From Macrostomum lignano (lineage: Eukaryota): 38,028 nt of DNA. The position numbers and the translations under genes were made by a program. This document shows positions 2,499-38,028 of the stretch, in pieces. Numbering within the stretch: the first letter of the stretch is position 1; each line of letters opens with the position of its first letter. The notes under the pieces are model-generated. The model did no database searches. It saw only the letters and a program-made list of their open reading frames with translations, and was not told the origin of the DNA. Location: the NCBI GenBank assembly GCA_002269645.1, contig NIVC01000580.1, positions 1 through 38,028 of the forward strand. Direction: 5' to 3'.

Positions 2499-26078
<23,580 letters not shown>

Positions 26079-26134
26079 TCAACTGCTGAAACTGCTGGAA
26101 TATTTACTTATGTTTTGCTGTTTCAAAGGAGATC

Positions 26135-26710
26135 CAGGGGAATTATCAATGGAGATCGAGGGCGATTCTCAATGGAGATTGAGGGCGATTATCAATGGAG
26201 ATCGAGGGCGATTATCAATGGAGATTGAGGGCGATTATCAATGGAGATTGAGGGCGATTATCAATGGAGATTGAGGGCGATTATCAATGGAGATTGAGGG
26301 CGATTCTCAATGGAGATTGAGGGCGATTATCAATGGAGATTGAGGGCGATTATCAATGGAGATTGAGGGCGATTATCAATGGAGATTGAGGGCGATTATC
26401 AATGGAGATTGAGGGCGATTATCAATGGAGATTGAGGGCGATTATCAATGGAGATTGAGGGCGATTATCAATGGAGATTGAGGGCGATTATCAATGGAGA
26501 TTGAGGGCGATTATCAATGGAGATTGAGGGCGATTATCAATGGAGATTGAGGGCGATTATCAATGGAGATTGAGAGCGATTAATCAATGGAGATTGAGGG
26601 CGATTAATCAATGGAGATTAAGGGCGATTATCAATGAAGATTGAGGGCGATTATCAAAGGAGATCGAGGGCGATTATCAAAGGACATTGAGGGCTATTCT
26701 CTATTAAGGC
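26135..26710. repeat. 23-bp minisatellite GAGGGCGATTATCAATGGAGATT, about 25 copies
   Basis: Lies between the COQ7 3' end and the tentative THADA first exon. Confidence 0.97.
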
Positions 26711-27353
26711 GATTGAATGAGATTCTAGAGGGAGTTTGAGCGTCATTCTAGATGTTGACAGATTATTTCTTGTTGATACAAAATTGAAAATGAAAAATAC
26801 GATTTAATAAACAACTCCTTTGCAGATTAATATTTGTATATTTAAGCATCAGGCTATGACAAGCCTGATAACAAAGCTATTGAAAATGAAGTACAATTTC
26901 AAAACTGTTCAAAATGCTTCGAAGAAAAGCAGATGGTTAACAGTCAGATAGAAATTCAAATAAAAAGCACTGGGTGACTTTCCGGTTTGAACTAAGTTTA
27001 AGCTAAGCAAAGGTTTCATTATTGTGGGTCAGTTTGCTTACACAGGAATACCTACTTGTAAGTTAACAAAATATAGCCAAATATTCAAGGATTCAAATAT
27101 TCAAGGAGCAAATTTAGACCGTTCGACTCCGAACCCACTGGACTACAACTCTTTCTCTACAACATGTAACTGGGTAAACGAAACGTGTGATTTTTAATGG
27201 CATATCTGTGGGGTTTTGAAAAAATCAATTTTCTTGGAATTTCTGCGGATATTTTTGGAATTTCTGGAATTCCCTCGGCATTTCCATGGAATTTCCCCGG
27301 CATTTCTATGGCATTTTATCGTTCTAAGGCTATTTACCAATATCTTTTGCGAA

Positions 27354-27363
27354 TTTATTTATT
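27354..27363 (-). terminator. COQ7 polyadenylation signal (overlapping AATAAA)
   Basis: The minus strand reads AATAAATAAA just after the frame-corrected stop codon. Confidence 0.6.
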
Positions 27364-27373
27364 GTGAATTAGT

Positions 27374-28779
27374 TCAGATCCGCTCCGACAAGAAGATGGC
27401 AACCCGACAGCCAGCTCGAATGGCGGCGGACAAAGCCGGATAAGCGGCGCAGACTCAGCGTCCTCGCGTAGTCCAGTGTCGTGATGCTCGGCCTCCTCGT
27501 CGCGGAATCGAGCGATGACCCGCATTAAGTCGGCGTGTAGCTCGGGATTATCGGCTAGCAGGCTGCGCAGCTGAGCATTGTAGTGTTCCTGAATCTCGGC
27601 TTCAACAGCCACAGTGCAGGCCATGGCGGCCTCTTTGCCAATTAAAGCGGTGCCGGCGCCCAAAGCGAAGCCGGCCACACGCCAGAACGGCATCAGCACG
27701 GTGGGCCGGGCGCGCAACGCCGGGATGAGGGCTTCGAACGCGGCCAGATGGTCCTGCTCCTGCTCGTGCATGTGGCGGATCAGCGGGCCTGTTGGGGTGC
27801 CGCCCAGCACAGCTAGCTGGCCGGCGTAGATCCGGTCGGCGCCGAATTCGCCTGCGGAAGTTGAGGCGGATTTAACTGAAATAGGAGCAGATCTATCGGA
27901 ACTGGTAGCGGGTTTCTCTGGGGTGCAGGTGGATCTGTTCGAACTAGAGGGAGATTTAACTGAGAACATGTACAGCAGGGGCGGATTGATGCAAACTAGG
28001 GGCAGATTTATTTAATCTAGGGGCGGATTTACAGGGAATCGAGGCTAATTTATTTAAACTATGGGCGGATTTATCTAAACCAGGATCGGATTTATCCAAA
28101 CCAGGGTCGGATTTATCTAAACTAGAGGCAGTTTTATTTAAACCAGGGGTGGATTTATCTAAACTAGGGGCAGGTTTATATAAACCAGGGGCGGATTTAT
28201 CTAAACTAGGGGCAGGTTTATCTAAACCAGGGGCGGATTTATTTAAACCAGAGGCAGGTTTATCTAAACCAGGGCGGATTTATATAAACCAGGGGCGGAT
28301 TTATCTAAAACAGGGGCGGATTTATCTAAGTCAGAGGTGGATTTATTGAAACTACATGTAGGGACGGATTTATCTAGTTTCAATTAATCATGTCAATAGT
28401 TATAAATGCATTAATAAATGGCGGAATATAACTGTGAACTGCAGATTGCGACCATTATAGGAATCGATAAAGTTGCACAAATACACACAAGCAGCAAACT
28501 GTTTAAATCACCAGCATGATCAACTCGAACGATCCGATCTAGCAGGGCCCGAGTCTCCGGCGTCAGCTTGGCCAAATCCAGGCTGGCAATTCGGCCAAGA
28601 AGCTGGGCGAGCTCTGGGTCGCGATGAAGCGGCGGCCGAGACTGCTGCTGTTGCTCCTGCTGTTGTTGTTGCTGCTGACTGCCAGACGATAGCAGACGAA
28701 TTGCCACGCGGGAAACGCTTTGGCCTGCGTTAACTGATCGGCGAGACAGGCGGACAATGCCGCCGCTTAATCCGGTAGC
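27374..28779 (-). CDS. COQ7: 5-demethoxyubiquinone hydroxylase COQ7 (CLK-1), mitochondrial di-iron protein; 2 exons with a 1-nt frameshift near the C-terminus
   Basis: Exon 28512-28779 (R/S-rich presequence, Q7EQ4 tract, LLDRIVRVDHAG) splices in phase 1 to exon 27374-27851 (EFGADRIYAGQ, EQDH, ACTVAVE, HYNAQL, RDEEAEHHDTGL). Adding one base near 27445 restores APAYPALSAAIRAGCRVAIFLSERI*, with TGA at 27374-27376 and AATAAA about 11 nt downstream. Confidence 0.95.
27960..28378. repeat. 21-22-bp minisatellite AAACCAGGGGCGGATTTATCT, degenerate toward 27865
   Basis: Fills COQ7 intron 27852-28511. Confidence 0.92.
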
Positions 28780-29162
28780 CTATGGACAGGTGTGTCATAG
28801 TGCACGTGCACTAATGTTACTAAAATATGCTCGCATTGATGAGTCATGTAACTAACACTTTAGCCTTACTCATAAATCAAGTTCCAGGTTATAAATCGCT
28901 AACAAACTATCAGAAATTATTAAGAGGCTTAAAGTCTGAATTCGATATAAGCAATTGTAAATCAAATCTGTGTAAAGGCACCATATTTTATTGAATTATT
29001 AATGAAAACAAACCTCATAAAATCGTTTCATTATAGCAAAGGTACTGAATTTGAATCAGCATTAAATTTGAATTGCTCTTTTCTGGATTAGGACATCTGG
29101 ATCTCGTTCGAGTTATTGCTAAATGGGATTATGATCAGGGCTTCACAGGCTTTCAGAACCAT

Positions 29163-29912
29163 CTGCTCCCCTCTCTTGCCTCTGCTCCCTTCTCTTCCTT
29201 CCGCTCCCCTCTCTTTCCTCTGCTCCCCTCTCTTCCCTCTGCTCCCTTCTCTTCTCTCTGCTCCCTCTCTTTCCTCTGCTCCCTCTCTTCCCTCTGCTCC
29301 CTTCTCTTCTCTCTGCTCCCTCTCTTCCCTCTGCTCCCTTCTCTTCTCTCTGCTCCCTCTCTTCTCTCTGCTCCCTCTCTTCCCTCTGCTCCCCTCTCTT
29401 CTCTCTGCTCCCCTCTCTTCTCTCTGCTCCCTCTCTTCCCTCTGCTCCCTTCTCTTCTCTCTGCTCCCTCTCTTCCCTCTGCTCCCTTCTCTTCTCTCTG
29501 CTCCCCTCTCTTCTCTCTGCTCCCTCTCTTCCCTCTGCTCCCCTCTCTTCCCTCTGCTCCCCTCTCTTTCCTCTGCTCCCTTCTCTTCTCTCTGCTCCCT
29601 CTCTTCTCTCTGCTCCCCTCTCTTCCCTCTGCTCCCTTCTCTTCTCTCTGCTCCCCTCTCTTTCCTCTGCCTCCCTTCTCTTCCTTCCGCTCCCCTCTCT
29701 TTCCTCTGCCTCCCTTCTCTTTCCTCTGCTCCCTTCTCTTCTCTCTGCTCCCCTCTCTTCCCTCTGCTCCCTTCTCTTCTCTCTGCTCCCCTCTCTTTCC
29801 TCTGCCTCCCTTCTCTTCCTTCCGCTCCCCTCTCTTTCCTCTGCCTCCCTTCTCTTCTCTCTGCTCCCCTCTCTTCCCTCGGCTCCCCTCTCTTTTCTCT
29901 GCTCTCCCTACT
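29163..29912. repeat. CT-rich minisatellite (CTCTGCTCCCCTCTCTTC-like units)
   Basis: Lies between the CISD3 stop and the COQ7 5' end; source of the L/S/P/F ORF artefacts. Confidence 0.97.
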
Positions 29913-29962
29913 CCATTATTCTGTGCAAATCAGAGACAAAAATACTGCTACACCGCTACGCA

Positions 29963-30400
29963 TCAGAACTGAAACTTTGGACACCAGCCGCAACTGCTGC
30001 ACAATGTTAAATCTTGTGCGTGATTAGATTTGTCTTTGCAATCGGCCTGTTTAGCCATCAGTTGGCAAGGCAGATTGGTATGACTGCCGTCGCACAGCGG
30101 TGGGCTCTTCGTGTACTTGCAATTGCAAAGCTGGTAGAGAGCCTGCGGCTTATCAGGCACAGTCCAGGCTAAGGGCTTGTACCCTGGCGGCGCCCGCCTG
30201 TGAGACCCGTCGCACCAGGGCTGCGATTGGCTGAGGCCGCATGCGCACCAGCGCAGCGACTGGCCGGGCCGGAGGCTGCTGCCGCGTACGTTGGACGGCC
30301 CGAATGTGGGACAGGCAGGCGCAGGGACTGCCGGCGAAGGCGGCTCCTTTGAATTGTCGGCCTGAAGGCGAGCATGTTGGAGGAGGCGACCAAGGCTGTA
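29963..30400 (-). CDS. CISD3: CDGSH iron-sulfur domain protein with two CDGSH motifs (CISD3/MiNT-like)
   Basis: Open frame from the acceptor at 30401-30402: YSLGRLLQHARLQ...WCACGLSQSQPWCDGSH...LCNCKYTKSPPLCDGSH...LCSSCGWCPKFQF*. It has two complete CDGSH motifs. There is no in-frame Met before the domains, and an in-frame TAA lies 7 codons upstream of the acceptor. Confidence 0.9.
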   Translation of the reverse strand, partial: YSLGRLLQHARLQADNSKEPPSPAVPAPACPTFGPSNVRGSSLRPGQSLRWCACGLSQSQPWCDGSHRRAPPGYKPLAWTVPDKPQALYQLCNCKYTKSPPLCDGSHTNLPCQLMAKQADCKDKSNHAQDLTLCSSCGWCPKFQF

Positions 30401-30479
30401 CTGTTGGGATAGAATTAGCAGTTAATCAAGCGGGCACCTAAAGGCTACAAGCATTGACAGTTAAGCTAAAAAGTGAAGA

Positions 30480-31172
30480 CTTGGGCTATATATGTGCATT
30501 AGTGGGGATGGGGGAGGCGCCAGCCAATTAGATCCGATCAGGGCTATATTTGTACATTAGTGGGGGTGGGGGAGGCGCCAGCTATATTAAATTGGATCAG
30601 GGCTATACTCGTATTTAGTACATTACTGGGGGTGGGGGAGGGGCGCCAGCTAATTAAATAGGATCAGGGCTATATTTATACATTAGTGGGGATGGGGGAG
30701 GCGCCAGCCAATTAGATCCGATCAGGGCTATATTTGTACATTAGTGGGGGGGGCAGAGGCGCCAGCTAATTAAATAGGATCAGGGCTACATTTGTACATT
30801 AGTGGGGATGGGGAGGCGCCAGCCAATTAGATCCGATCAGGGCTATATTTGTACATTAGTGGGGGGGCAGAGGCGCCAGCTAATTAAATAGGATCAGGGC
30901 TACATTTGTACATTAGTGGGGATGGGGAGGCGCCAGCCAATTAGATCCGATCAGGGCTATATTTGTACATTAGTGGGGGGCAGAGGCGCCAGCTAATTAA
31001 ATAGGATCAGGGCTATATTTGTACATTAGTGGGGATGGGGGAGGCGCCAGCCAATTAGATCCGATCAGGGCTATATTATACATTAGTGGGGATGGGGGAG
31101 GCGCCAGCCAATTAGATCCGATCAGGGCTATATTTGTACATTAGTGGGGGGGGGGCAAAGGCGCTGATCTGG
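30480..31172. repeat. About 58-bp G-rich minisatellite, about 12 copies, with two alternating unit types
   Basis: GGGCTATATTTGTACATTAGTGGGG...AGGCGCCAG followed by either CCAATTAGATCCGATCA or CTAATTAAATAGGATCA. Confidence 0.95.
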
Positions 31173-31833
31173 GCTAATACGAGTATGATAAAAATATGTA
31201 AAAATATCAAAAATCAAGACAAAAAGAAGGCAACTAACATTAATGCTTGTTCATCAAATTGAAAGCACAAGTGAGCAGATTGAGAACACTTCAGTTATAT
31301 TTTTTATCTGTAATCTAATTTGACTGCGTCACGCAGTGCAGTACAAGTGCTTACTTAAGAGTACAAAGTTAATTCTTATAAGATAAAACTAAGAGACACA
31401 ATAAATCATCGATGACTTATATCGAATTACTGTCAAACTATAGTGTACATCATTGAATATTAAAAGCAACATTAAAAGCTTCCTCAGAAGTCCGCAGAAC
31501 AATGCACAAACAGAGATCCACAGGCATATATTTTAATATAGAGATATCGAAACTCGATTTCTTATTAAAATGCCTAAATTAACTACTTAATTAGTAGTAT
31601 ATCTTTGTCGAAAAATAGTGGGCTTTGCCGTAGACATTTTTTTAACCACAAGATTTCTACGACCAGCTACTCTCAGCAGTTATGTCAGTAATATATACGA
31701 TTGCATCATATCGAATTTACAGTCTATAGCTACTCATTTCGAGCTTGATGCTTCTAACCATAGACAACCTGACTGCGCCAACAGCTATTGGCAGATGTAT
31801 CAAATCAATGGCAAGCAATGCAATAAAAGCTAC

Positions 31834-34800
31834 TCAACGTCTTATAACCACCACAAGTGAATCCCGTTCTAGTCGTTCTTCAACCATCTGCCGGCTCAGT
31901 CCCGTGCTGGCGCAGATCTCATCCATAGACCGGTATCCGTCTAGCAGCCGGTTCAGCTGGTCGGTTCCTCTTAGCCCGACAGAGCAGTCAGCCGATCCGG
32001 TTTGACTCCAGTGCAGCCGAACCGGATAGGCGCTAACCCGCCGGATTAGGCAGTGCAGCAGGCCGAACTGCACTAATCTGAGCACGTCTACATTCGCTGC
32101 CAGGCCGCTGTGCAGGGTCAGCAGGTCTTTCAGAGTGGAGCCCGGCGACATGCACGAGAATAAGCGGAACAGCCGCCCGATGCTGGGCGTTCGCTCCTGC
32201 GTTCGGGAGCGGGGTGGTGGGCGATTGAGGATGAGTAGACATCCTCTAGACATGTGCCTATCGATTCTCTAGAGATAGGGGACAGATTCTCAAGAGATAG
32301 GGGCAGATTCTATAGAGATAAGATGGGATTCTATAGAGATGGATAGGATTCTATAGAGATGCGATCAGATTCTATAGAGATGGATCAGATTCTATAGAGA
32401 TGGGATATTATTCTATAGAGATGGGATCGGTTTCTATAGAGATGGGATCAGATTCAATAGAGATGAAAACGGATTCTACAGAGATGAAATAGGATTCTAT
32501 AGAGATGGGATATGATTCGCTGGAGATCTCTAGATACCCGGGTGTAGAGCGCAGATGAATTGCGAGCATCACCTTGTTAGACAGTGTGACAGCTTCCTGG
32601 CAGAGCTGGCCCAGTCTGGGATCGGACACGAGCCTATGCAGTCCGGTCAGACAGGCGTAAGAGTCAGAGTACAGGGTCAGCGGCAGGAATCTGACAGCGT
32701 GCAGGCTGCAGAGATTCTGCAGGCAGGTTTTCACTATGCTCTTGTCTACGTCGGCCATGCAGGCTATTTTAGCGACGTGCGAGACTCCGTCAATGTAGGG
32801 CAGGATTAGGCTGGTGACAATGTCTGTCTTGACTGGCGGAGACCGGCCAACCAGAACTGGCACCTGCCGGATTGAATCGGTGACAGATGCTGATGTTTGA
32901 TGCTGGTGACAGATGATGATGACAGATGATGGTGACAGATGATGGTGACAGATGCTGGTGGCAGATGTTGGTGACAGATGATGGTGACAGATGCTGGTGA
33001 CAGATGCTGGTGACAGATGATGGTGACAGATGCTGGTGGCAGATGTTGGTGACAGATGCTAGTGACAGATGCTGGTGACAGATGCTGGTGACAGATGATG
33101 GTGACAGATGCTGGTGACAGATGATGGTGACAGATAATAGTGACAGATGCTGGTGACAGATGATGGTGACAGATGCTGGTGACAGATGATGGTGACTGAC
33201 AGATGATGGTGACAGATGCTGGTGACAGATGATGGTGACTGACAGATGATGGTGACAGATGACAGATCTGGTGACAGATGATGGTGACAGATGATGGTGA
33301 CAGATGCTGGTGACAGATGCTGGTGACAGATGCTGATGACAGATGCTGGTGACAGATGATGGTGACAGATGCTGGTGACAGATGATGGTGACAGATGCTG
33401 GTGACAGATGCTGGTGACAGATGCTGGTGACAGATGATGGTGACAGATGATGGTGACAGATGCTGGTGGCAGATGTTGGTGACAGATGATGGTGACAGAT
33501 GCTGGTGACAGATGATGGTGACAGATGATGGTGACAGATGCTGGTGGCAGATGTTGGTGACAGATGCTAGTGACAGATGATGGTGACAAATGATGGTGAC
33601 AGATGATGATGACAGATGATGGTGACAGATGCTGGTGACAGATGCTGGTGACAGATGATGGTGACAGATGATGGTGACAGATGCTGGTGACAGATGTTGG
33701 TGACAGATGCTGGTGACAGATGCTGTTGACAGATGATAGTGACAGATGCTGATGACAGATGCTGGTGACAGATGCTAGTGACAGATGCTGATGACAGATG
33801 CTGGTGACAGATGATGGTGACAGATGTTGGTGACAGATGCTGATGACAGATGCTGGTGACAGATGATGGTGACAGATGTTGGTGACAGATGCTGGTGACA
33901 GATGCTGTTGACAGATGATAGTGACAGATGCTGATGACAGATGCTGGTGACAGATGATGGTGACTGACAGATGATGGTGACAGATGATAGTGTCAGATGC
34001 TGGTGACAGATGATGGTGACAGATGCTGATGACAGATGCTGGTGACAGATGATGGTGACAGATGCTGGTGACAGATGCTGGTGACAGATGCTGGTGACAG
34101 ATGATGGTGACAGATGATGGTGATAGATGCTGGTGACAGATGATGGTGACAGATGATGGTGACAGATGCTGGTGACAGATGCTGGTGACAGATGCTGATG
34201 ACAGATGCTGGTGACAGATGATGGTGACAGATGCTGGTGACAGATGATGGTGACAGATGCTGGTGACAGATGATGGTGACAGATGATGGTGATAGATGCT
34301 GGTGACAGATGATAGTGACAGATGCTGATGACAGATGCTGGTGACAGATGATGGTGACTGACAGATGATGGTGACAGATGATAGTGTCAGATGCTGGTGA
34401 CAGATGATGGTGACAGATGCTGATGACAGATGCTGGTGACAGATGATGGTGACAGATGCTGGTGACAGATGATGGTGACAGATGATGGTGATAGATGCTG
34501 GTGACAGATGATGGTGACAGATGATGGTGACAGATGCTGGTGACAGATGCTGGTGACAGATGCTGGTGACAGATGCTGATGACAGATGCTGGTGACAGAT
34601 GATGGTGACATCTGTCGATGGTGATCTGTCGGGGATCTGTCGGGACTCGGGATCTGTCGGGGATCTGTCGATGGCGACGATGGTGAGTCCTGCGCCGCGA
34701 AGCTGTTCAACCGCATGCTGCTATCGCGGTTACAGCCTGTGCTGGACCCGTACCTGCGACCTGAGCAGAACGGATTCCGGCCCCATCGCGGCACAGTGAC

Positions 34801-37693
34801 GCAGATCCTGGCTCTTCGACGAGTCATCGAGGAGGCGCGCATCCGCCAGTTGACCCTGATCCTGATCTTCGTCGATTTCAGGAAGGCTTTCGACTCGGTC
34901 GTGAGGGACGCGCTCCCAGAGGTGCTCCGTGCGTACAACGTGCCAGAGCTGCTGATTTCTGCTGTCATGGCGCTGTACCACGGCACGACGGCTGCTGTCT
35001 CAACACCAGACGGCCTATCGGATTTCTTCGAGACATCCTCCGGGGTGCTCCAGGGAGATACGCTAGCGCCGTTTATTCTGGTGCTTGACTGGGTGCTACG
35101 GACTGCTCTGCCTTCCAACGACGACGGCTTCCTGCTGCGGCGACGCGTGGGTCGACGCCAACCGGAGAGACGGCTCAGCGTGCTTGGCTACGCCGATGAC
35201 CTCGCCCTGCTGTCCTCGACCGTCGAGGGCGCCCAACGACAGCTGGATAGGCTGGTTGCCGTTGCGGCGAGCGTCGGCCTGGTGGTCAACACGCAGAAGA
35301 CCGTCGTGCTATGCGTGCCGGACGACACCGAGGCTGCAATCTTCTGCCGAGGCGCTGACGGACAGGCGAGTGAGCTTCCAAGATGTCAGCAGTTCGTCTA
35401 CCTCGGCGGTCTGGTTCCCGACGTCCGCGAGGATCTGCGGCGTCGCCGAGGACTTGCTTGGGCTGCCTTTCGTTCTATAAGGTCAGTCCTGCAGTCCGAG
35501 GCCCTACCGGACCGCCAGAGGGCGGCGCTGTTCCAGGCGGTGATCGAGACCGTCCTGTTATACAACGCCGAGACTGGACGCTGACAGACTCGCTCGAGGC
35601 TCAAGTCGACGCGGCGCACGCTGGCCTGCTGCGCCGCCTTCAAGATCGGCAACGAGCGAGTCACCAACACGGCGCTCTATCATCGCGCCGGCCTGGCCCG
35701 TCCTAGCGATCTGCTGCGCCGTCGGCGACTCCAGCTGGCAGGCCACGTCATCCGCGCCGAGGCCTACTGCCCGGAGCCGGTGCAGGAGGTGCTGCTACTT
35801 ACGTTGCAGGCACCCTACCGGCGGGGACAGGCGAGGACTCGGCGCTACGTCGACTGTCTGCTGGCTGACGCCGGCGCCCCGGACTCTGCCGGCGGTGCGG
35901 CTTTTGTTCGCGCCCAAGCTTTGAAGCGCGCCATCTGACGCTGCTTTTGTGATCTGGCAGCGTACTCTGTTGTTGTTGTTGTTATGGTGACAGATGCTGG
36001 TGACAGATGATGGTGACAGATGCTGGTGACAGATGATGGTGACAGATGATGGTGATAGATGCTGGTGACAGATGATGGTGATAGATGCTGGTGACAGATG
36101 ATAGTGTCAGATGCTGGTGACAGCTTCAGGAAGCAGACATTGGTGCAATCAATTCGTCACAGTAGTTGACATTTAAGAGAACAGTACTAGATAATTAGTG
36201 ACACACAGGGACCAGTAGTTGGTAAACAGTAATAATATGGCATTTAAATAAGTAGCAATCGATCAGCAAGGCAGATAAACAAACCTCAAAATCCTGCGGC
36301 ATTGCGGCGGCCTCTAAAGGCGCGGCCGGTTTCAGAAAGAGCTCCAAAGATCTGCCTGGCAACACCTGCAGCTTGCAGGAGCCGGGCCCGTTAAGACTGG
36401 CTCGAATGCTGGTCAGTACAGGAAGCAGTTTGGTCTGGGCGTCCGGGTCGGATAGGAATGCGGTCTCAACCTCCAGGCTGTGAAAGTAGCGGCCAAGCTT
36501 TCTCACAATCAGCTCGTATTTGACTGGCACCTACGGGTGAACAAAAAGGGTTTAACATACTGCTAATAGTAGCAACTTCAGCTAGACCAGGGGTCGATAA
36601 ACGGGCCAGATAAGGAATCCATCACAAGGATGCGGCCCAGATCAGAGAAGAAATGAGAAGGAAGACAAGAAAGGAAAGTAGATAAGAGTGAAGTCGTGAG
36701 TGGAGAGTTGACAGTAGAATCGGCATAAACCCTAACGGATTGCTATTACCACGAAGTTTCAATGGACCAGAGGGTCGGATAGATAGCGGAGTTGCCGATC
36801 CCCGAGCCCTCTCTTGTATTAGAAACCATTTGTGCACGCACAAGAGATTCAATTTTAATTATTTTTGTTACTTTTGTTAGTAGGAGGTCTCTTAATTTAA
36901 CTTTTTTTGTATTTGTAGGGGTAACCGTTGGCTCGTTGAAAAATCATCCTGCCTGCTTGCGTCTGACTTTGGTCTCTCTCCTTACTGCTCTCTCATTGGC
37001 TGAGCTAGATTAAGCCTGCCCCCCACGCTGAGTTACGTCTGTCTGACTTTGATCTCTCTTTTTACTGCTCTCTCATTGGCTGAGCTAGATTGGGCCTGCC
37101 CCTTAGGATGAGTTTCGTTTGTGTTGCGTTCACTTGTGTACATGGAGTTAAATGTCTGTTGTTCATTTATTAATCACATATGCTTCCAAAGAAGGAAAGG
37201 AAATTTTAGTTGCCAAATTTAATTTTGAAATGACACTGCGCATAAACTACTGAAAAAGTAGATGCTCCGATTTTTTCACAAATTTAATTATCTGGTTATT
37301 CTAGTATCAGTGGTCCAAACAGAACTTTTCAAACCAAAAGACAAAAGGCATAGCAATAGTGCAGATTCCAACCTGACAGTCCATACTGATAACCAGGCCG
37401 ATGTTAAAGTGCATAGCGTTCCGTTTATACCGCTTATCCTCGATGCACTGAGCACAGCCCATAATCCGGGATCCAAACGCGTCCAACCAGATGAATCGAT
37501 TGTCAAAATCCGTCTTAGTAATCAGATAGCGGCTGACCTTGTCAAAGCTTTCCTTCACTATGAAATCCGCCGGCTCTTGCACCTCGATTTTTGGCCCAGC
37601 CTCGTGATGGAATATGCAATAAAATATGCATTGAACATCCGATCTCTGACCAGCAACTGGCTGTCCACTGTGCTGCACGGCTGGCACTCTCAT
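31834..37693 (-). CDS. NPRL2: GATOR1 complex subunit NPRL2 (nitrogen permease regulator 2-like), 4 exons, about 406 aa
   Basis: Exons 37373-37693 (ATG; CIFYCIFHHEAGPKI, RNAMHFNIGLV), 36285-36530 (ELIVRKLGRYFHSLEVE), 32573-32863 (VPV...ILPYIDGVSHVAKIACMADVD), 31834-32196 (CMSPGSTLKDL, LVQFGLLHCLIRR, SMDEICASTG). All junctions are phase 0 GT-AG. Confidence 0.95.
32262..32535. repeat. About 21-bp minisatellite GATTCTATAGAGATGGGATCA
   Basis: Fills NPRL2 intron 32197-32572. Confidence 0.92.
32878..34610. repeat. 13-bp satellite (GTGACAGATGMTG)n, left part
   Basis: In NPRL2 intron 32864-36284; interrupted by the retroelement. Confidence 0.98.
34685..35983 (+). mobile_element. 5'-truncated non-LTR retrotransposon (RTE/RTEX-like), reverse transcriptase plus C-terminus, decayed
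   Basis: ESCAAKLFNRMLL...EQNGFR...FVDFRKAFDSV...GVLQGDTLAPF...LGYADDLAL...FVYLG. Two frameshifts at about 35572 and 35635, then RRRLQLAGHVIR...RRGQARTRRYVD to TGA at 35936-35938, a short 3' UTR and a (GTT)5 tail at 35969-35983. No endonuclease domain is present. It lies antisense within an NPRL2 intron. Confidence 0.92.
35984..36123. repeat. 13-bp satellite, right part
   Basis: The same unit resumes directly after the (GTT)5 tail. Confidence 0.97.
36955..37102. repeat. Two-copy direct repeat, 80-bp period
   Basis: TCTGACTTTG...TTACTGCTCTCTCATTGGCTGAGCTAGATT...GCCTGCCCC occurs at 36962 and 37042, in NPRL2 intron 36531-37372. Confidence 0.9.
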
Positions 37694-38028
37694 TATTGAC
37701 AGTTCAGATTGTGCTACTTTTTATTTGTTAGATTGAACCGAGGCTAGTGCATATTAGTAGTATATGTAGCTCATTATCGGCTTATTGATTGAAATCTGTC
37801 GCCTGAAATTCTGTAGATTAACAAAAAAACTACATTTGTCATTTCGAACTTTTGTTTGAGGCAGGGAAGGGAGCTAATTGTTTAAGGCTGACAGCTTAGT
37901 CAGTTGAAGCGAGAAAAGCTAACTAAGGTTGCGAAAATGAAAAATCGACATTCGATCAACGCCTCGGCGTAAAACTCAGCTAAATATTCAACAAGATGAA
38001 AGAGGAAAATTCAGTCCAAATCTGGAAT

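What the first reader, a model, noticed from the sequence alone, without database searches (positions are those of the whole stretch)
26078..37693. Candidate trans-spliced operon NPRL2-CISD3-COQ7-THADA in which the spliced leader may supply the start codon
Seen: four co-oriented genes with only about 1.2-1.4 kb from stop to next coding start, roughly half of it tandem array. COQ7 exon 1 has no Met; an in-frame TAG (28782-28780) doubles as an acceptor, and the frame opens in phase 0 as ATGLSGGIVRLSRRS. The first in-frame Met lies after the first iron-ligand Glu. CISD3 likewise opens in phase 0 right after CCCAACAG (30401) as YSLGRLLQHARL, with an in-frame TAA upstream and no Met before its CDGSH motifs. 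Established: flatworm spliced leaders end in AUG that can initiate translation, and SL trans-splicing resolves operons. Inference: SL-AUG would create M-ATGLSGG and M-YSLGRLL, both resembling mitochondrial presequences, for two adjacent mitochondrial iron proteins.
Basis: partly seen in the sequence, partly recalled or inferred. Interest (0 to 1): 0.8.

Follow-up and report, generated by a model that had tools for sequence, protein, structure and literature searches.

The report
Flatworm genes that borrow a start codon
This is a gene cluster of the flatworm Macrostomum lignano in which two genes (COQ7 and a CDGSH iron-sulfur protein) have no start codon of their own and most likely get it from the AUG at the end of the trans-spliced leader; that mechanism and this kind of operon are already known in flatworms, so it is a tidy but ordinary example.

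Summary
The sequence observations are correct. The window is the whole contig NIVC01000580.1 of Macrostomum lignano (assembly Mlig_3_7). This flatworm's single 35-nt spliced leader (SL) ends in ATG. About 30% of its genes are trans-spliced and about 15% lie in operons whose spacers are swollen by repeats.

NPRL2, a CDGSH protein, COQ7 and THADA sit head to tail on the minus strand. The gaps are 1.2-1.5 kb, 45-63% tandem array, and 435-805 nt once repeats are subtracted.

COQ7 and the CDGSH gene lack any usable genomic ATG. GenBank's RNA-seq-based annotation calls COQ7, and the one CDGSH record whose name is shown, 5'-partial. CCATAGG at the COQ7 start is identical in four separately assembled copies, so the assembly-insertion escape is not supported.

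Corrections:
It is the annotated CDS start, it matches the published SL-acceptor motif, and it is also in frame.
- The mitochondrial-presequence argument holds for COQ7 but is weak for the CDGSH protein.
- At THADA the SL AUG would be out of frame.
- No SL-joined read could be inspected here.

It is a new example of a known kind, of low novelty.

The parts
37803..37816 (-). Two overlapping matches to the SL-acceptor motif (CTACAG ending 37811, TTTCAG ending 37803), about 110 nt upstream of the NPRL2 ATG
   Evidence: Motif scan. TTTCAG|GCGACAG is also present in the paralogous locus L005. The SL AUG here would open only a 7-codon uORF.
31834..37693 (-). NPRL2 (Mlig004773g2 or g3). CDS exons 37693-37373, 36530-36285, 32863-32573 and 32196-31834. 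It has its own ATG.
   Evidence: The exon join gives 406 aa. Exact match to PAA80470.1/PAA80472.1. Pfam NPR2, E=3e-57.
30483..31149 (.). 57-bp tandem array (11.4 copies) in the NPRL2-CDGSH spacer
   Evidence: TRF. The spacer is about 1 kb shorter in copy L001.
30401..30406 (-). The first exon base would be 30400, in frame, giving M-YSLGRLLQHARLQ...
   Evidence: In frame, but it does not match [T/C]TNCAG and is not the annotated 5' end.
30362..30367 (-). CTTCAG: the most likely SL acceptor of the CDGSH gene. The first exon base is 30361, in frame, giving M-ADNSKEPP...
   Evidence: One of only two motif hits in the 1472-nt gap, and exactly at the annotated 5'-partial CDS start. Best pyrimidine tract among the candidates, 0.74.
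29963..30361 (-). CDGSH iron-sulfur protein CDS as annotated (132 aa, 5'-partial, single exon, two CDGSH motifs)
   Evidence: Pfam zf-CDGSH, two stretches. Identical in WIN, L002 and L004.
29162..29909 (.). 19-bp tandem array (about 40 copies) in the CDGSH-COQ7 spacer, probably inside the CDGSH 3'UTR
   Evidence: TRF. The only AATAAA in this gap lies downstream of the array. The spacer is 1193 to 2419 nt among the four copies.
28987..28992 (-). AATAAA: the only canonical poly(A) signal between CDGSH and COQ7, about 200 nt upstream of the COQ7 acceptor
28780..28782 (-). TAG that is both the in-frame stop closing the COQ7 frame upstream and the proposed SL acceptor (CCATAG|GCT)
   Evidence: It is the only AG that gives a full-length in-frame COQ7. 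Identical in all four copies.
28512..28779 (-). COQ7 exon 1, with no ATG. With the SL AUG it reads M-ATGLSGGIVRLSRRSVNAGQSVSRVAIRLL... The annotated CDS begins at 28758 (IVRLS).
27852..28511 (-). COQ7 intron (GT...AG) containing a 21-bp array at 27976-28346
   Evidence: The splice restores RVDHAG|EFGADRIYAGQ.
27374..27851 (-). COQ7 exon 2. This copy lacks one C in the run at 27446-27447, which shifts the frame of the last ~25 codons. The true stop, by comparison with the other copies, is TGA 27376-27374.
27354..27363 (-). Two overlapping AATAAA signals just after the COQ7 stop
26123..26698 (.). 23-bp tandem array (25 copies) in the COQ7-THADA spacer
   Evidence: TRF.
26086..26100 (-). TTCCAG (ending 26095) and TTTCAG (ending 26086): SL-acceptor motifs immediately upstream of THADA
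   Evidence: Conserved in L001 and L002. The SL AUG would be out of frame and open a 23-26 codon uORF across the THADA ATG.
26076..26078 (-). THADA's own ATG, the annotated CDS start. The gene continues toward lower coordinates.
   Evidence: A DUF2428 exon lies at 11709-11960.

Best explanation
The window is a Macrostomum lignano contig carrying a co-oriented cluster: NPRL2, a CDGSH iron-sulfur protein, COQ7 and THADA. In a sister contig WDR75 lies upstream as well.

The cluster is most likely transcribed into long precursors. These are cut into single mRNAs by 3'-end formation and by trans-splicing of the species' 35-nt spliced leader.

COQ7 and the CDGSH gene have no genomic start codon. Each ORF opens in phase 0 right after a 3' splice acceptor: CCATAG|28779 for COQ7, and CTTCAG|30361 for CDGSH, with CAACAG|30400 as a possible alternative. 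The leader ends in AUG, so joining it there creates AUG-GCU-ACC... (M-ATGLSGG...) and AUG-GCC-GAC... (M-ADNSK...). Translation of both proteins therefore depends on trans-splicing. NPRL2 and THADA use their own ATGs.

Shown here: the species, the gene identities, the missing ATGs, the phase-0 acceptors, identity across four copies, and the partial RNA-seq-based CDS models.

Taken from the literature: the SL sequence, the acceptor motif, the operon criteria, and use of the SL AUG as initiator in flatworms.

Inferred: that the SL is actually joined at these sites, that its AUG initiates, and that the genes share one precursor.
For: Species and contig:
- The COQ7 product is 100% identical to M. 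lignano PAA80468.1 on a 38028-nt contig.

Literature:
- The SL ends in ATG. The SL-acceptor motif is [T/C]TNCAG. About 30% of genes are trans-spliced and about 15% lie in operons. Operon spacers are inflated by repeats and are ~100 nt once adjusted, with a 1-kb threshold (PMC8629364).
- Macrostomum workers already describe the SL's final ATG as a translation start codon (PMC10468722).
- In S. mansoni the SL AUG is in frame in 28% of trans-spliced transcripts, and more than 40 cDNAs need it (Cheng 2006, as summarised in PMC9851317).

This locus:
- COQ7 is named partial in all listed records and so is the L001 CDGSH copy. The 132-aa CDGSH CDS also starts without an ATG. No model has an upstream ATG exon.
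- The CDGSH CDS starts exactly at a CTTCAG motif, a 1-in-512 coincidence per position.
- CCATAG| is the only acceptor that yields full-length in-frame COQ7.
- The 5' regions are identical in four copies that differ elsewhere.
- No other COQ7 cluster is annotated in the species.
- Repeat-adjusted gaps are 805, 435 and 667 nt.
- NPRL2 and the window's COQ7 share the transcriptional-unit prefix Mlig004773. The naming rule is given in PMC5730564.
Against: - No SL-containing read, cDNA or polycistronic RNA was seen here.
- The annotated COQ7 CDS starts at 28758, 21 nt downstream of the TAG acceptor and not after any AG, so the exact COQ7 junction is unverified.
- CCATAG does not match the consensus SL-acceptor motif, and the CDGSH-COQ7 gap contains no such motif at all.
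- In the sister contigs COQ7 carries other unit prefixes (Mlig014096, Mlig006855), so the shared-unit evidence rests on one contig and on my reading of the naming convention.
- About 60% of trans-spliced M. lignano genes are not in operons (PMC8629364).
- M-ADNSKEPP is not a mitochondrial presequence.
Confidence: 0.65

Rival explanations
1. Each gene has its own promoter in the unique part of its spacer. COQ7 and CDGSH are trans-spliced as monocistronic pre-mRNAs and still take the SL AUG. The cluster is just a run of co-oriented genes, not an operon.
For: Most trans-spliced M. lignano genes (about 60%) are not in operons (PMC8629364). Raw spacers are 1.2-1.5 kb with 435-805 nt of unique AT-rich sequence. 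COQ7 in the sister contigs belongs to other transcriptional-unit clusters.
Against: The repeat-adjusted gaps fall below the published 1-kb operon threshold. The window's COQ7 shares a transcriptional-unit prefix with NPRL2. The authors state that units tend to break in repeat-rich operon spacers, which explains the differing prefixes.
Confidence: 0.25
2. COQ7 and/or CDGSH have an unannotated upstream cis exon carrying a normal ATG that splices to the same acceptors.
For: Flatworm SL acceptors are often shared with cis-splicing (PMC12582326). ATG|GT occurs at 28984 and elsewhere in the spacers.
Against: None of the phase-0 ATG...GT candidates has the species' donor consensus GT[G/A]AG. The StringTie/TACO RNA-seq models start these CDSs without an ATG in every copy and name COQ7 and one CDGSH copy partial.
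Confidence: 0.06
3. The missing ATGs are artefacts or decay. Either there is an assembly insertion (CCATGG read as CCATAGG), or these are pseudogenised duplicates in a hidden polyploid.
For: The assembly or its copies do carry coding indels: a 1-bp C-run deletion in this window's COQ7 exon 2, another in L004 exon 1, and a scrambled CDGSH 5' half in L001. Removing one A would give CC-ATG-GCT.
Against: CCATAGG is not a homopolymer site and is identical in four separately assembled copies that differ at nearby SNPs and indels. The CDGSH 5' region is identical in three copies. No alternative intact COQ7 is annotated in the species.
Confidence: 0.03
4. Translation starts at a near-cognate codon inside exon 1 (for example AUU at 28758 or CUG nearby), without any contribution from the SL AUG.
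For: The annotated COQ7 CDS happens to begin at ATT 28758. Near-cognate starts exist in SL-bearing mRNAs of other taxa (PMC9851317).
Against: An in-frame AUG supplied by the SL would be the first AUG a scanning ribosome meets. There is no evidence of a capped transcript starting at 28760. This does not explain the CDGSH start lying exactly at CTTCAG|.
Confidence: 0.03

Closest known systems
Flatworm SL 3'-terminal AUG used as initiator methionine (Cheng, Cohen, Ndegwa & Davis 2006, Schistosoma mansoni; 'slORFs' in PMC9851317)
   Same: The SL ends in AUG. The recipient ORF lacks its own start. The acceptor is in phase 0, so the SL AUG completes the reading frame.
   Different: Different species (a free-living macrostomid) and different genes. 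Here there is only genomic and annotation evidence, with no cDNA or translation assay. Two neighbouring genes of one cluster both depend on the SL AUG.
Macrostomum lignano operons / transcriptional units (Wudarski 2017, PMC5730564; Ustyantsev & Berezikov 2021, PMC8629364)
   Same: Co-oriented conserved genes. Spacers are inflated by tandem repeats and fall under 1 kb after repeat subtraction. SL-type acceptors lie at the downstream genes. Two of the genes share a transcriptional-unit prefix.
   Different: I could not see the SL or T-fill tracks. The COQ7 acceptor (TAG) is non-consensus. The unit is split differently in the sister contigs.
C. elegans SL2-type operons
   Same: A poly(A) signal of the upstream gene is followed by an intercistronic stretch and then a trans-splice acceptor. 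For CDGSH-COQ7 this is AATAAA at 28992 and the acceptor at 28780, about 200 nt apart.
   Different: M. lignano has a single SL with no SL1/SL2 specialisation. Nematode SLs do not end in AUG. The spacers here carry large minisatellites.
CISD3/MiNT (mitochondrial two-CDGSH protein)
   Same: Two CDGSH motifs in one chain (Pfam zf-CDGSH, two stretches).
   Different: The closest relatives form a subgroup with a conserved CP...YGPxNxRG lead-in and an extra C-terminal Cys motif (C...LCxxCG). Their N-termini are short and not presequence-like. Mitochondrial location is not established for this subgroup.

Membership tests
SL-AUG-initiated flatworm mRNA | The host's spliced leader ends in AUG | tested here: met
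   Host identified as M. lignano. The SL CGGTCTCTTACTGCGAAGACTCAATTTATTGCATG is followed by a GTAAG donor in the SL RNA gene (PMC8629364).
SL-AUG-initiated flatworm mRNA | No genomic in-frame AUG upstream of essential residues | tested here: met
   COQ7: the first in-frame Met lies after the HAGE ligand. CDGSH: the first Met lies after both CDGSH motifs. The same holds in all intact copies.
SL-AUG-initiated flatworm mRNA | A 3' splice acceptor in phase 0 with the ORF, with the frame closed upstream | tested here: met
   CCATAG|28779, where the TAG is itself the in-frame stop. CTTCAG|30361 and CAACAG|30400, with TAA at 30424-30422.
SL-AUG-initiated flatworm mRNA | SL sequence found joined to the acceptor in RNA | not testable with these tools
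   No M. lignano RNA-seq or transcript collection is reachable. The indirect evidence is partial CDS models lacking an ATG, with the CDGSH CDS starting exactly at the motif. The COQ7 model starts 21 nt downstream of the AG, which is unexplained.
SL-AUG-initiated flatworm mRNA | Translation actually starts at the SL AUG | not testable with these tools
   Needs Ribo-seq, N-terminal proteomics or a reporter assay.
M. lignano operon (criteria of PMC8629364) | Adjacent genes on the same strand with no opposite-strand gene between them | tested here: met
   Gene calls on the contig.
M. lignano operon (criteria of PMC8629364) | Repeat-adjusted intergenic distance below 1 kb | tested here: met
   1472-667=805, 1183-748=435 and 1295-628=667 nt, measured CDS to CDS. 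Distances from transcript ends would be shorter.
M. lignano operon (criteria of PMC8629364) | The downstream gene is SL trans-spliced | tested here: inconclusive
   Motif-perfect acceptors lie at CDGSH and THADA, and a TAG acceptor at COQ7.
M. lignano operon (criteria of PMC8629364) | A polycistronic precursor exists | tested here: inconclusive
   NPRL2 (Mlig004773g1-g3) and the window's COQ7 (Mlig004773g5) share a transcriptional-unit cluster prefix. The sister contigs use other prefixes.
COQ7 (PF03232, di-iron hydroxylase) | Full-length match to the family profile | tested here: met
   Pfam COQ7 E=7e-67, profile positions 2-169 of 169. 58-73% identity to metazoan COQ7. The window copy has a frameshifted tail.
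CISD3/MiNT | Two CDGSH motifs plus a mitochondrial presequence | tested here: inconclusive
   The two motifs are present. The N-terminus from the annotated acceptor carries acidic residues and is Pro-rich. Relatives have short N-termini. No targeting predictor was available.

The most novel reading that the evidence does not exclude
Both start codons were lost in evolution because the SL AUG made them redundant. In COQ7, a single-base insertion may have turned an ancestral CC-ATG-GCT into CC-AT(A)G|GCT. That would destroy the start codon and create the TAG acceptor in one step, so that SL-AUG|GCU recreates exactly the old N-terminus. Two neighbouring iron-protein genes would then be translatable only after trans-splicing, which couples their expression strictly to SL supply.
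Probability: 0.12. Interest if true: 0.45.

Novelty: new member of a known kind. Interest (0 to 1): 0.2.

Why it matters
Practically, this explains why GenBank lists M. lignano COQ7 (and the named CDGSH copy) as partial. It also gives their likely true N-termini. Annotation pipelines for SL-bearing flatworms should add the SL AUG before calling ORFs. Biologically, it is one more case in which translation of conserved genes depends on trans-splicing, and in which minisatellites sit inside operon spacers or 3'UTRs without breaking the unit. It opens no new question, because the mechanism, the operon type and the gene models are already published.

Tried and rejected
1. Assembly insertion (CCATGG). 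Rejected: four copies all read CCATAGG.

2. A frameshift hiding a genomic start for CDGSH. The out-of-frame ATG at 30374 gives MLAFRPTIQRSRLRR..., which looks like a presequence. Rejected: WIN, L002 and L004 are identical through this region, and all three frames of this GC-rich stretch give Arg-rich peptides.

3. Cis mini-exons ending in phase 0. No candidate has a GT[G/A]AG donor.

4. Other in-frame acceptors for COQ7. Only sites inside the poly-Gln tract or later qualify, and they would delete the presequence.

5. SL RNA gene or other known RNA in the window. There is no SL match and no Rfam hit.

6. Gene-level SL or operon tables. The supplements held for PMC5730564 and PMC5816591 have no entry, none is held for PMC8629364, and no paper mentions Mlig004773.

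7. THADA locus tags, to test unit sharing. The first query was too short. The DUF2428 exon query returned no M. lignano protein.

8. Cheng 2006 is not held, so it is cited through PMC9851317.

9. Unexplained: why the COQ7 model starts at 28758. Possibly it is a StringTie 5' end, truncated because SL-bearing reads cannot map in EndToEnd mode. That is my inference and was not tested.
Full report
**What the window is.** A search with the conceptual COQ7 protein found a 100%-identical Macrostomum lignano protein. Its cluster includes PAA80468.1 (BOX15_Mlig004773g5, 'partial') on a contig of exactly 38028 nt. The contig look-up shows that the window is NIVC01000580.1 of assembly GCA_002269645.1 (Mlig_3_7). 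It also lists the annotated genes on the minus strand:
- NPRL2, 37693-31834, 406 aa
- a CDGSH protein, 30361-29963, 132 aa
- COQ7, 28758-27355, 247 aa
- THADA, from ATG 26078

Pfam confirms NPR2, zf-CDGSH (two stretches), COQ7 and DUF2428.

**Observation check.**
- COQ7 exon 1 (28779-28512) opens directly after TAG 28782-28780 and reads ATGLSGGIVRLSRRS with no Met. The first in-frame Met (IRHMHEQ) follows the HAGE iron ligand.
- The CDGSH ORF has an in-frame TAA at 30424-30422, CCCAACAG ending at 30401, and no Met before its CDGSH motifs.
- The gaps are 1472, 1183 and 1295 nt. Tandem arrays of 57-, 19- and 23-bp units fill 45-63% of them.

**Host biology, from the literature.** M. lignano has one 35-nt spliced leader, CGGTCTCTTACTGCGAAGACTCAATTTATTGCATG, followed by a GTAAG donor in the SL RNA gene. 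About 30% of genes are trans-spliced. The enriched SL-acceptor motif is [T/C]TNCAG. About 15% of genes lie in operons. Operon spacers are inflated by repeats, peak near 100 nt after repeat subtraction, and were classed with a 1-kb repeat-adjusted threshold (PMC8629364).

The GenBank models derive from StringTie/TACO 'transcriptional units' (TUs). These are cut into genes at SL-read peaks and poly(A) sites. The locus-tag prefix is the TU cluster (PMC5730564).

Macrostomum workers already call the SL's final ATG a translation start codon (PMC10468722). [quoted passage not shown]

1. The lineage's SL does end in AUG.
2. I fetched three further copies of the locus: L001 (NIVC01001608.1), L002 (NIVC01000579.1) and L004 (NIVC01004961.1). 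All four copies read CTATGACACACCTGTCCATAGGCTACC, although they differ at nearby SNPs and indels. The CCATGG assembly-error idea is therefore not supported.
3. COQ7 is named partial in all listed records, and so is the L001 CDGSH copy. The 132-aa CDGSH CDS likewise starts without an ATG. No upstream ATG exon appears in any copy. A scan for phase-0 ATG...GT mini-exons found no donor matching GT[G/A]AG.

No other COQ7 cluster is annotated in the species, so these loci are the working gene.

**Where the leader would join.**
- *COQ7.* CCATAG|28779 is the only AG that yields a full-length in-frame protein. It gives M-ATGLSGGIVRLSRRSVNAGQSVSRVAIRLL, which has five Arg and no acidic residue in the first 40 positions and so resembles a presequence. 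The acceptor is a TAG and does not match the consensus motif, and that gap holds no consensus motif at all.
- *CDGSH.* The 1472-nt gap contains only two [T/C]TNCAG matches. One of them, CTTCAG ending at 30362, lies exactly at the annotated 5'-partial CDS start and is in frame, giving M-ADNSKEPP.
- *THADA.* TTCCAG and TTTCAG sit 8-17 nt upstream of THADA's own ATG. The SL AUG would be out of frame there and would open a 23-26 codon uORF.

One detail remains unexplained. The COQ7 model begins at 28758, 21 nt downstream of the TAG and not after any AG. I suspect a truncated StringTie 5' end, because SL-bearing reads cannot map in EndToEnd mode. This is inference only.

**The presequence argument.** It holds for COQ7. 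For the CDGSH protein it is weak. The nearest relatives form a subgroup whose conserved core begins at CP...YGPxNxRG. They carry an extra C-terminal Cys motif, and their N-termini are short and not presequence-like.

**The operon question.** Repeat-adjusted CDS-to-CDS gaps are 805, 435 and 667 nt, all under the published threshold. The only AATAAA between CDGSH and COQ7 (28992) lies beyond the 19-bp array and about 200 nt before the COQ7 acceptor. This fits a 3'UTR that runs through the array, followed by a short intercistronic stretch.

NPRL2 copies are Mlig004773g1-g3 and the window's COQ7 is Mlig004773g5. By the naming rule, this implies a TU spanning both genes in this contig. In the sister contigs COQ7 has other prefixes. 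That is consistent with the authors' remark that TUs break in repeat-rich spacers, but it leaves the point short of proof.

In L005 a co-oriented WDR75 gene lies 1.2 kb upstream of NPRL2, so the cluster has at least five genes.

**Verdict.** Trans-splicing with an SL-supplied AUG is the best explanation for both ATG-less genes (about 0.65-0.75). Operon status is likely but unproven (about 0.6). The mechanism, the operon type and the gene models are already published, so this is a new member of a known kind and of low interest.

Noticed in passing
window 27446-27447 (minus strand, COQ7 exon 2): This copy has CC where the three other copies have CCC. The frameshift replaces the conserved tail ...APAYPALSAAIRAGCRVAIFLSERI with ...APLIRLCPPPFELAVGLPSSCRSGSELIHNK in the deposited protein PAA80468.1. 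This is either a homopolymer assembly error or a copy-specific lesion.
   Followed up: yes
L004 about 9975-9985 (COQ7 exon 1); L001 7225-7345 (CDGSH 5' half): The other copies carry their own lesions. L004 has a 1-bp C-run deletion, so its COQ7 model starts at DLAKL (181 aa). In L001 the first ~200 nt of the CDGSH gene are replaced by sequence resembling the 57-bp spacer repeat, leaving a 74-aa remnant.
   Followed up: partly
window 34625-35581, + strand: A reverse-transcriptase ORF fragment (Pfam RVT_1, E=2.6e-23), antisense to NPRL2. It is embedded in the 13-bp minisatellite that fills NPRL2 intron 2, with arrays at 32879-34610 and 35984-36123 on either side.
   Followed up: partly
L005 3396-3411 (NIVC01000579.1): TTCAATTTTTTGCATG matches 14 of the last 16 nt of the spliced leader. 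It is genome-encoded immediately upstream of the WDR75 CDS, and its ATG is in frame with it (ATG CCT CCT | ACT...). The annotated CDS starts 9 nt after that ATG. It could be a relic of an SL-bearing retrocopy or a side effect of SL trimming. Not resolved.
   Followed up: partly
window 1-38028, e.g. 2923-9574: Tandem arrays cover 49% of the contig (18751 nt). They include a 6.6-kb array of a 20-bp unit (338 copies) and arrays in most introns and spacers. Array lengths differ between the four copies while the flanks stay nearly identical.
   Followed up: partly
window 30374-30168, minus strand: An out-of-frame ATG inside the CDGSH 5' region opens a 69-codon ORF, MLAFRPTIQRSRLRRQSLRLPVPH..., that looks like a mitochondrial presequence. 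Splicing at CTTCAG|30361 would remove it with the outron. It is probably a by-product of GC-rich sequence.
   Followed up: yes
window 29963-30100, minus strand (CDGSH C-terminus): The CDGSH protein has a C-terminal extension with conserved cysteines (C...LCxxCGxxPxF/W). A small set of eukaryotic relatives share it, but classical CISD3 proteins do not. It may be a distinct subfamily.
   Followed up: partly
L005 3418-6986: A co-oriented WDR75-like gene lies 1.2 kb upstream of NPRL2 in the sister contig, and that spacer has no tandem array. The window ends 335 nt upstream of NPRL2, so its own upstream neighbour is not visible.
   Followed up: partly
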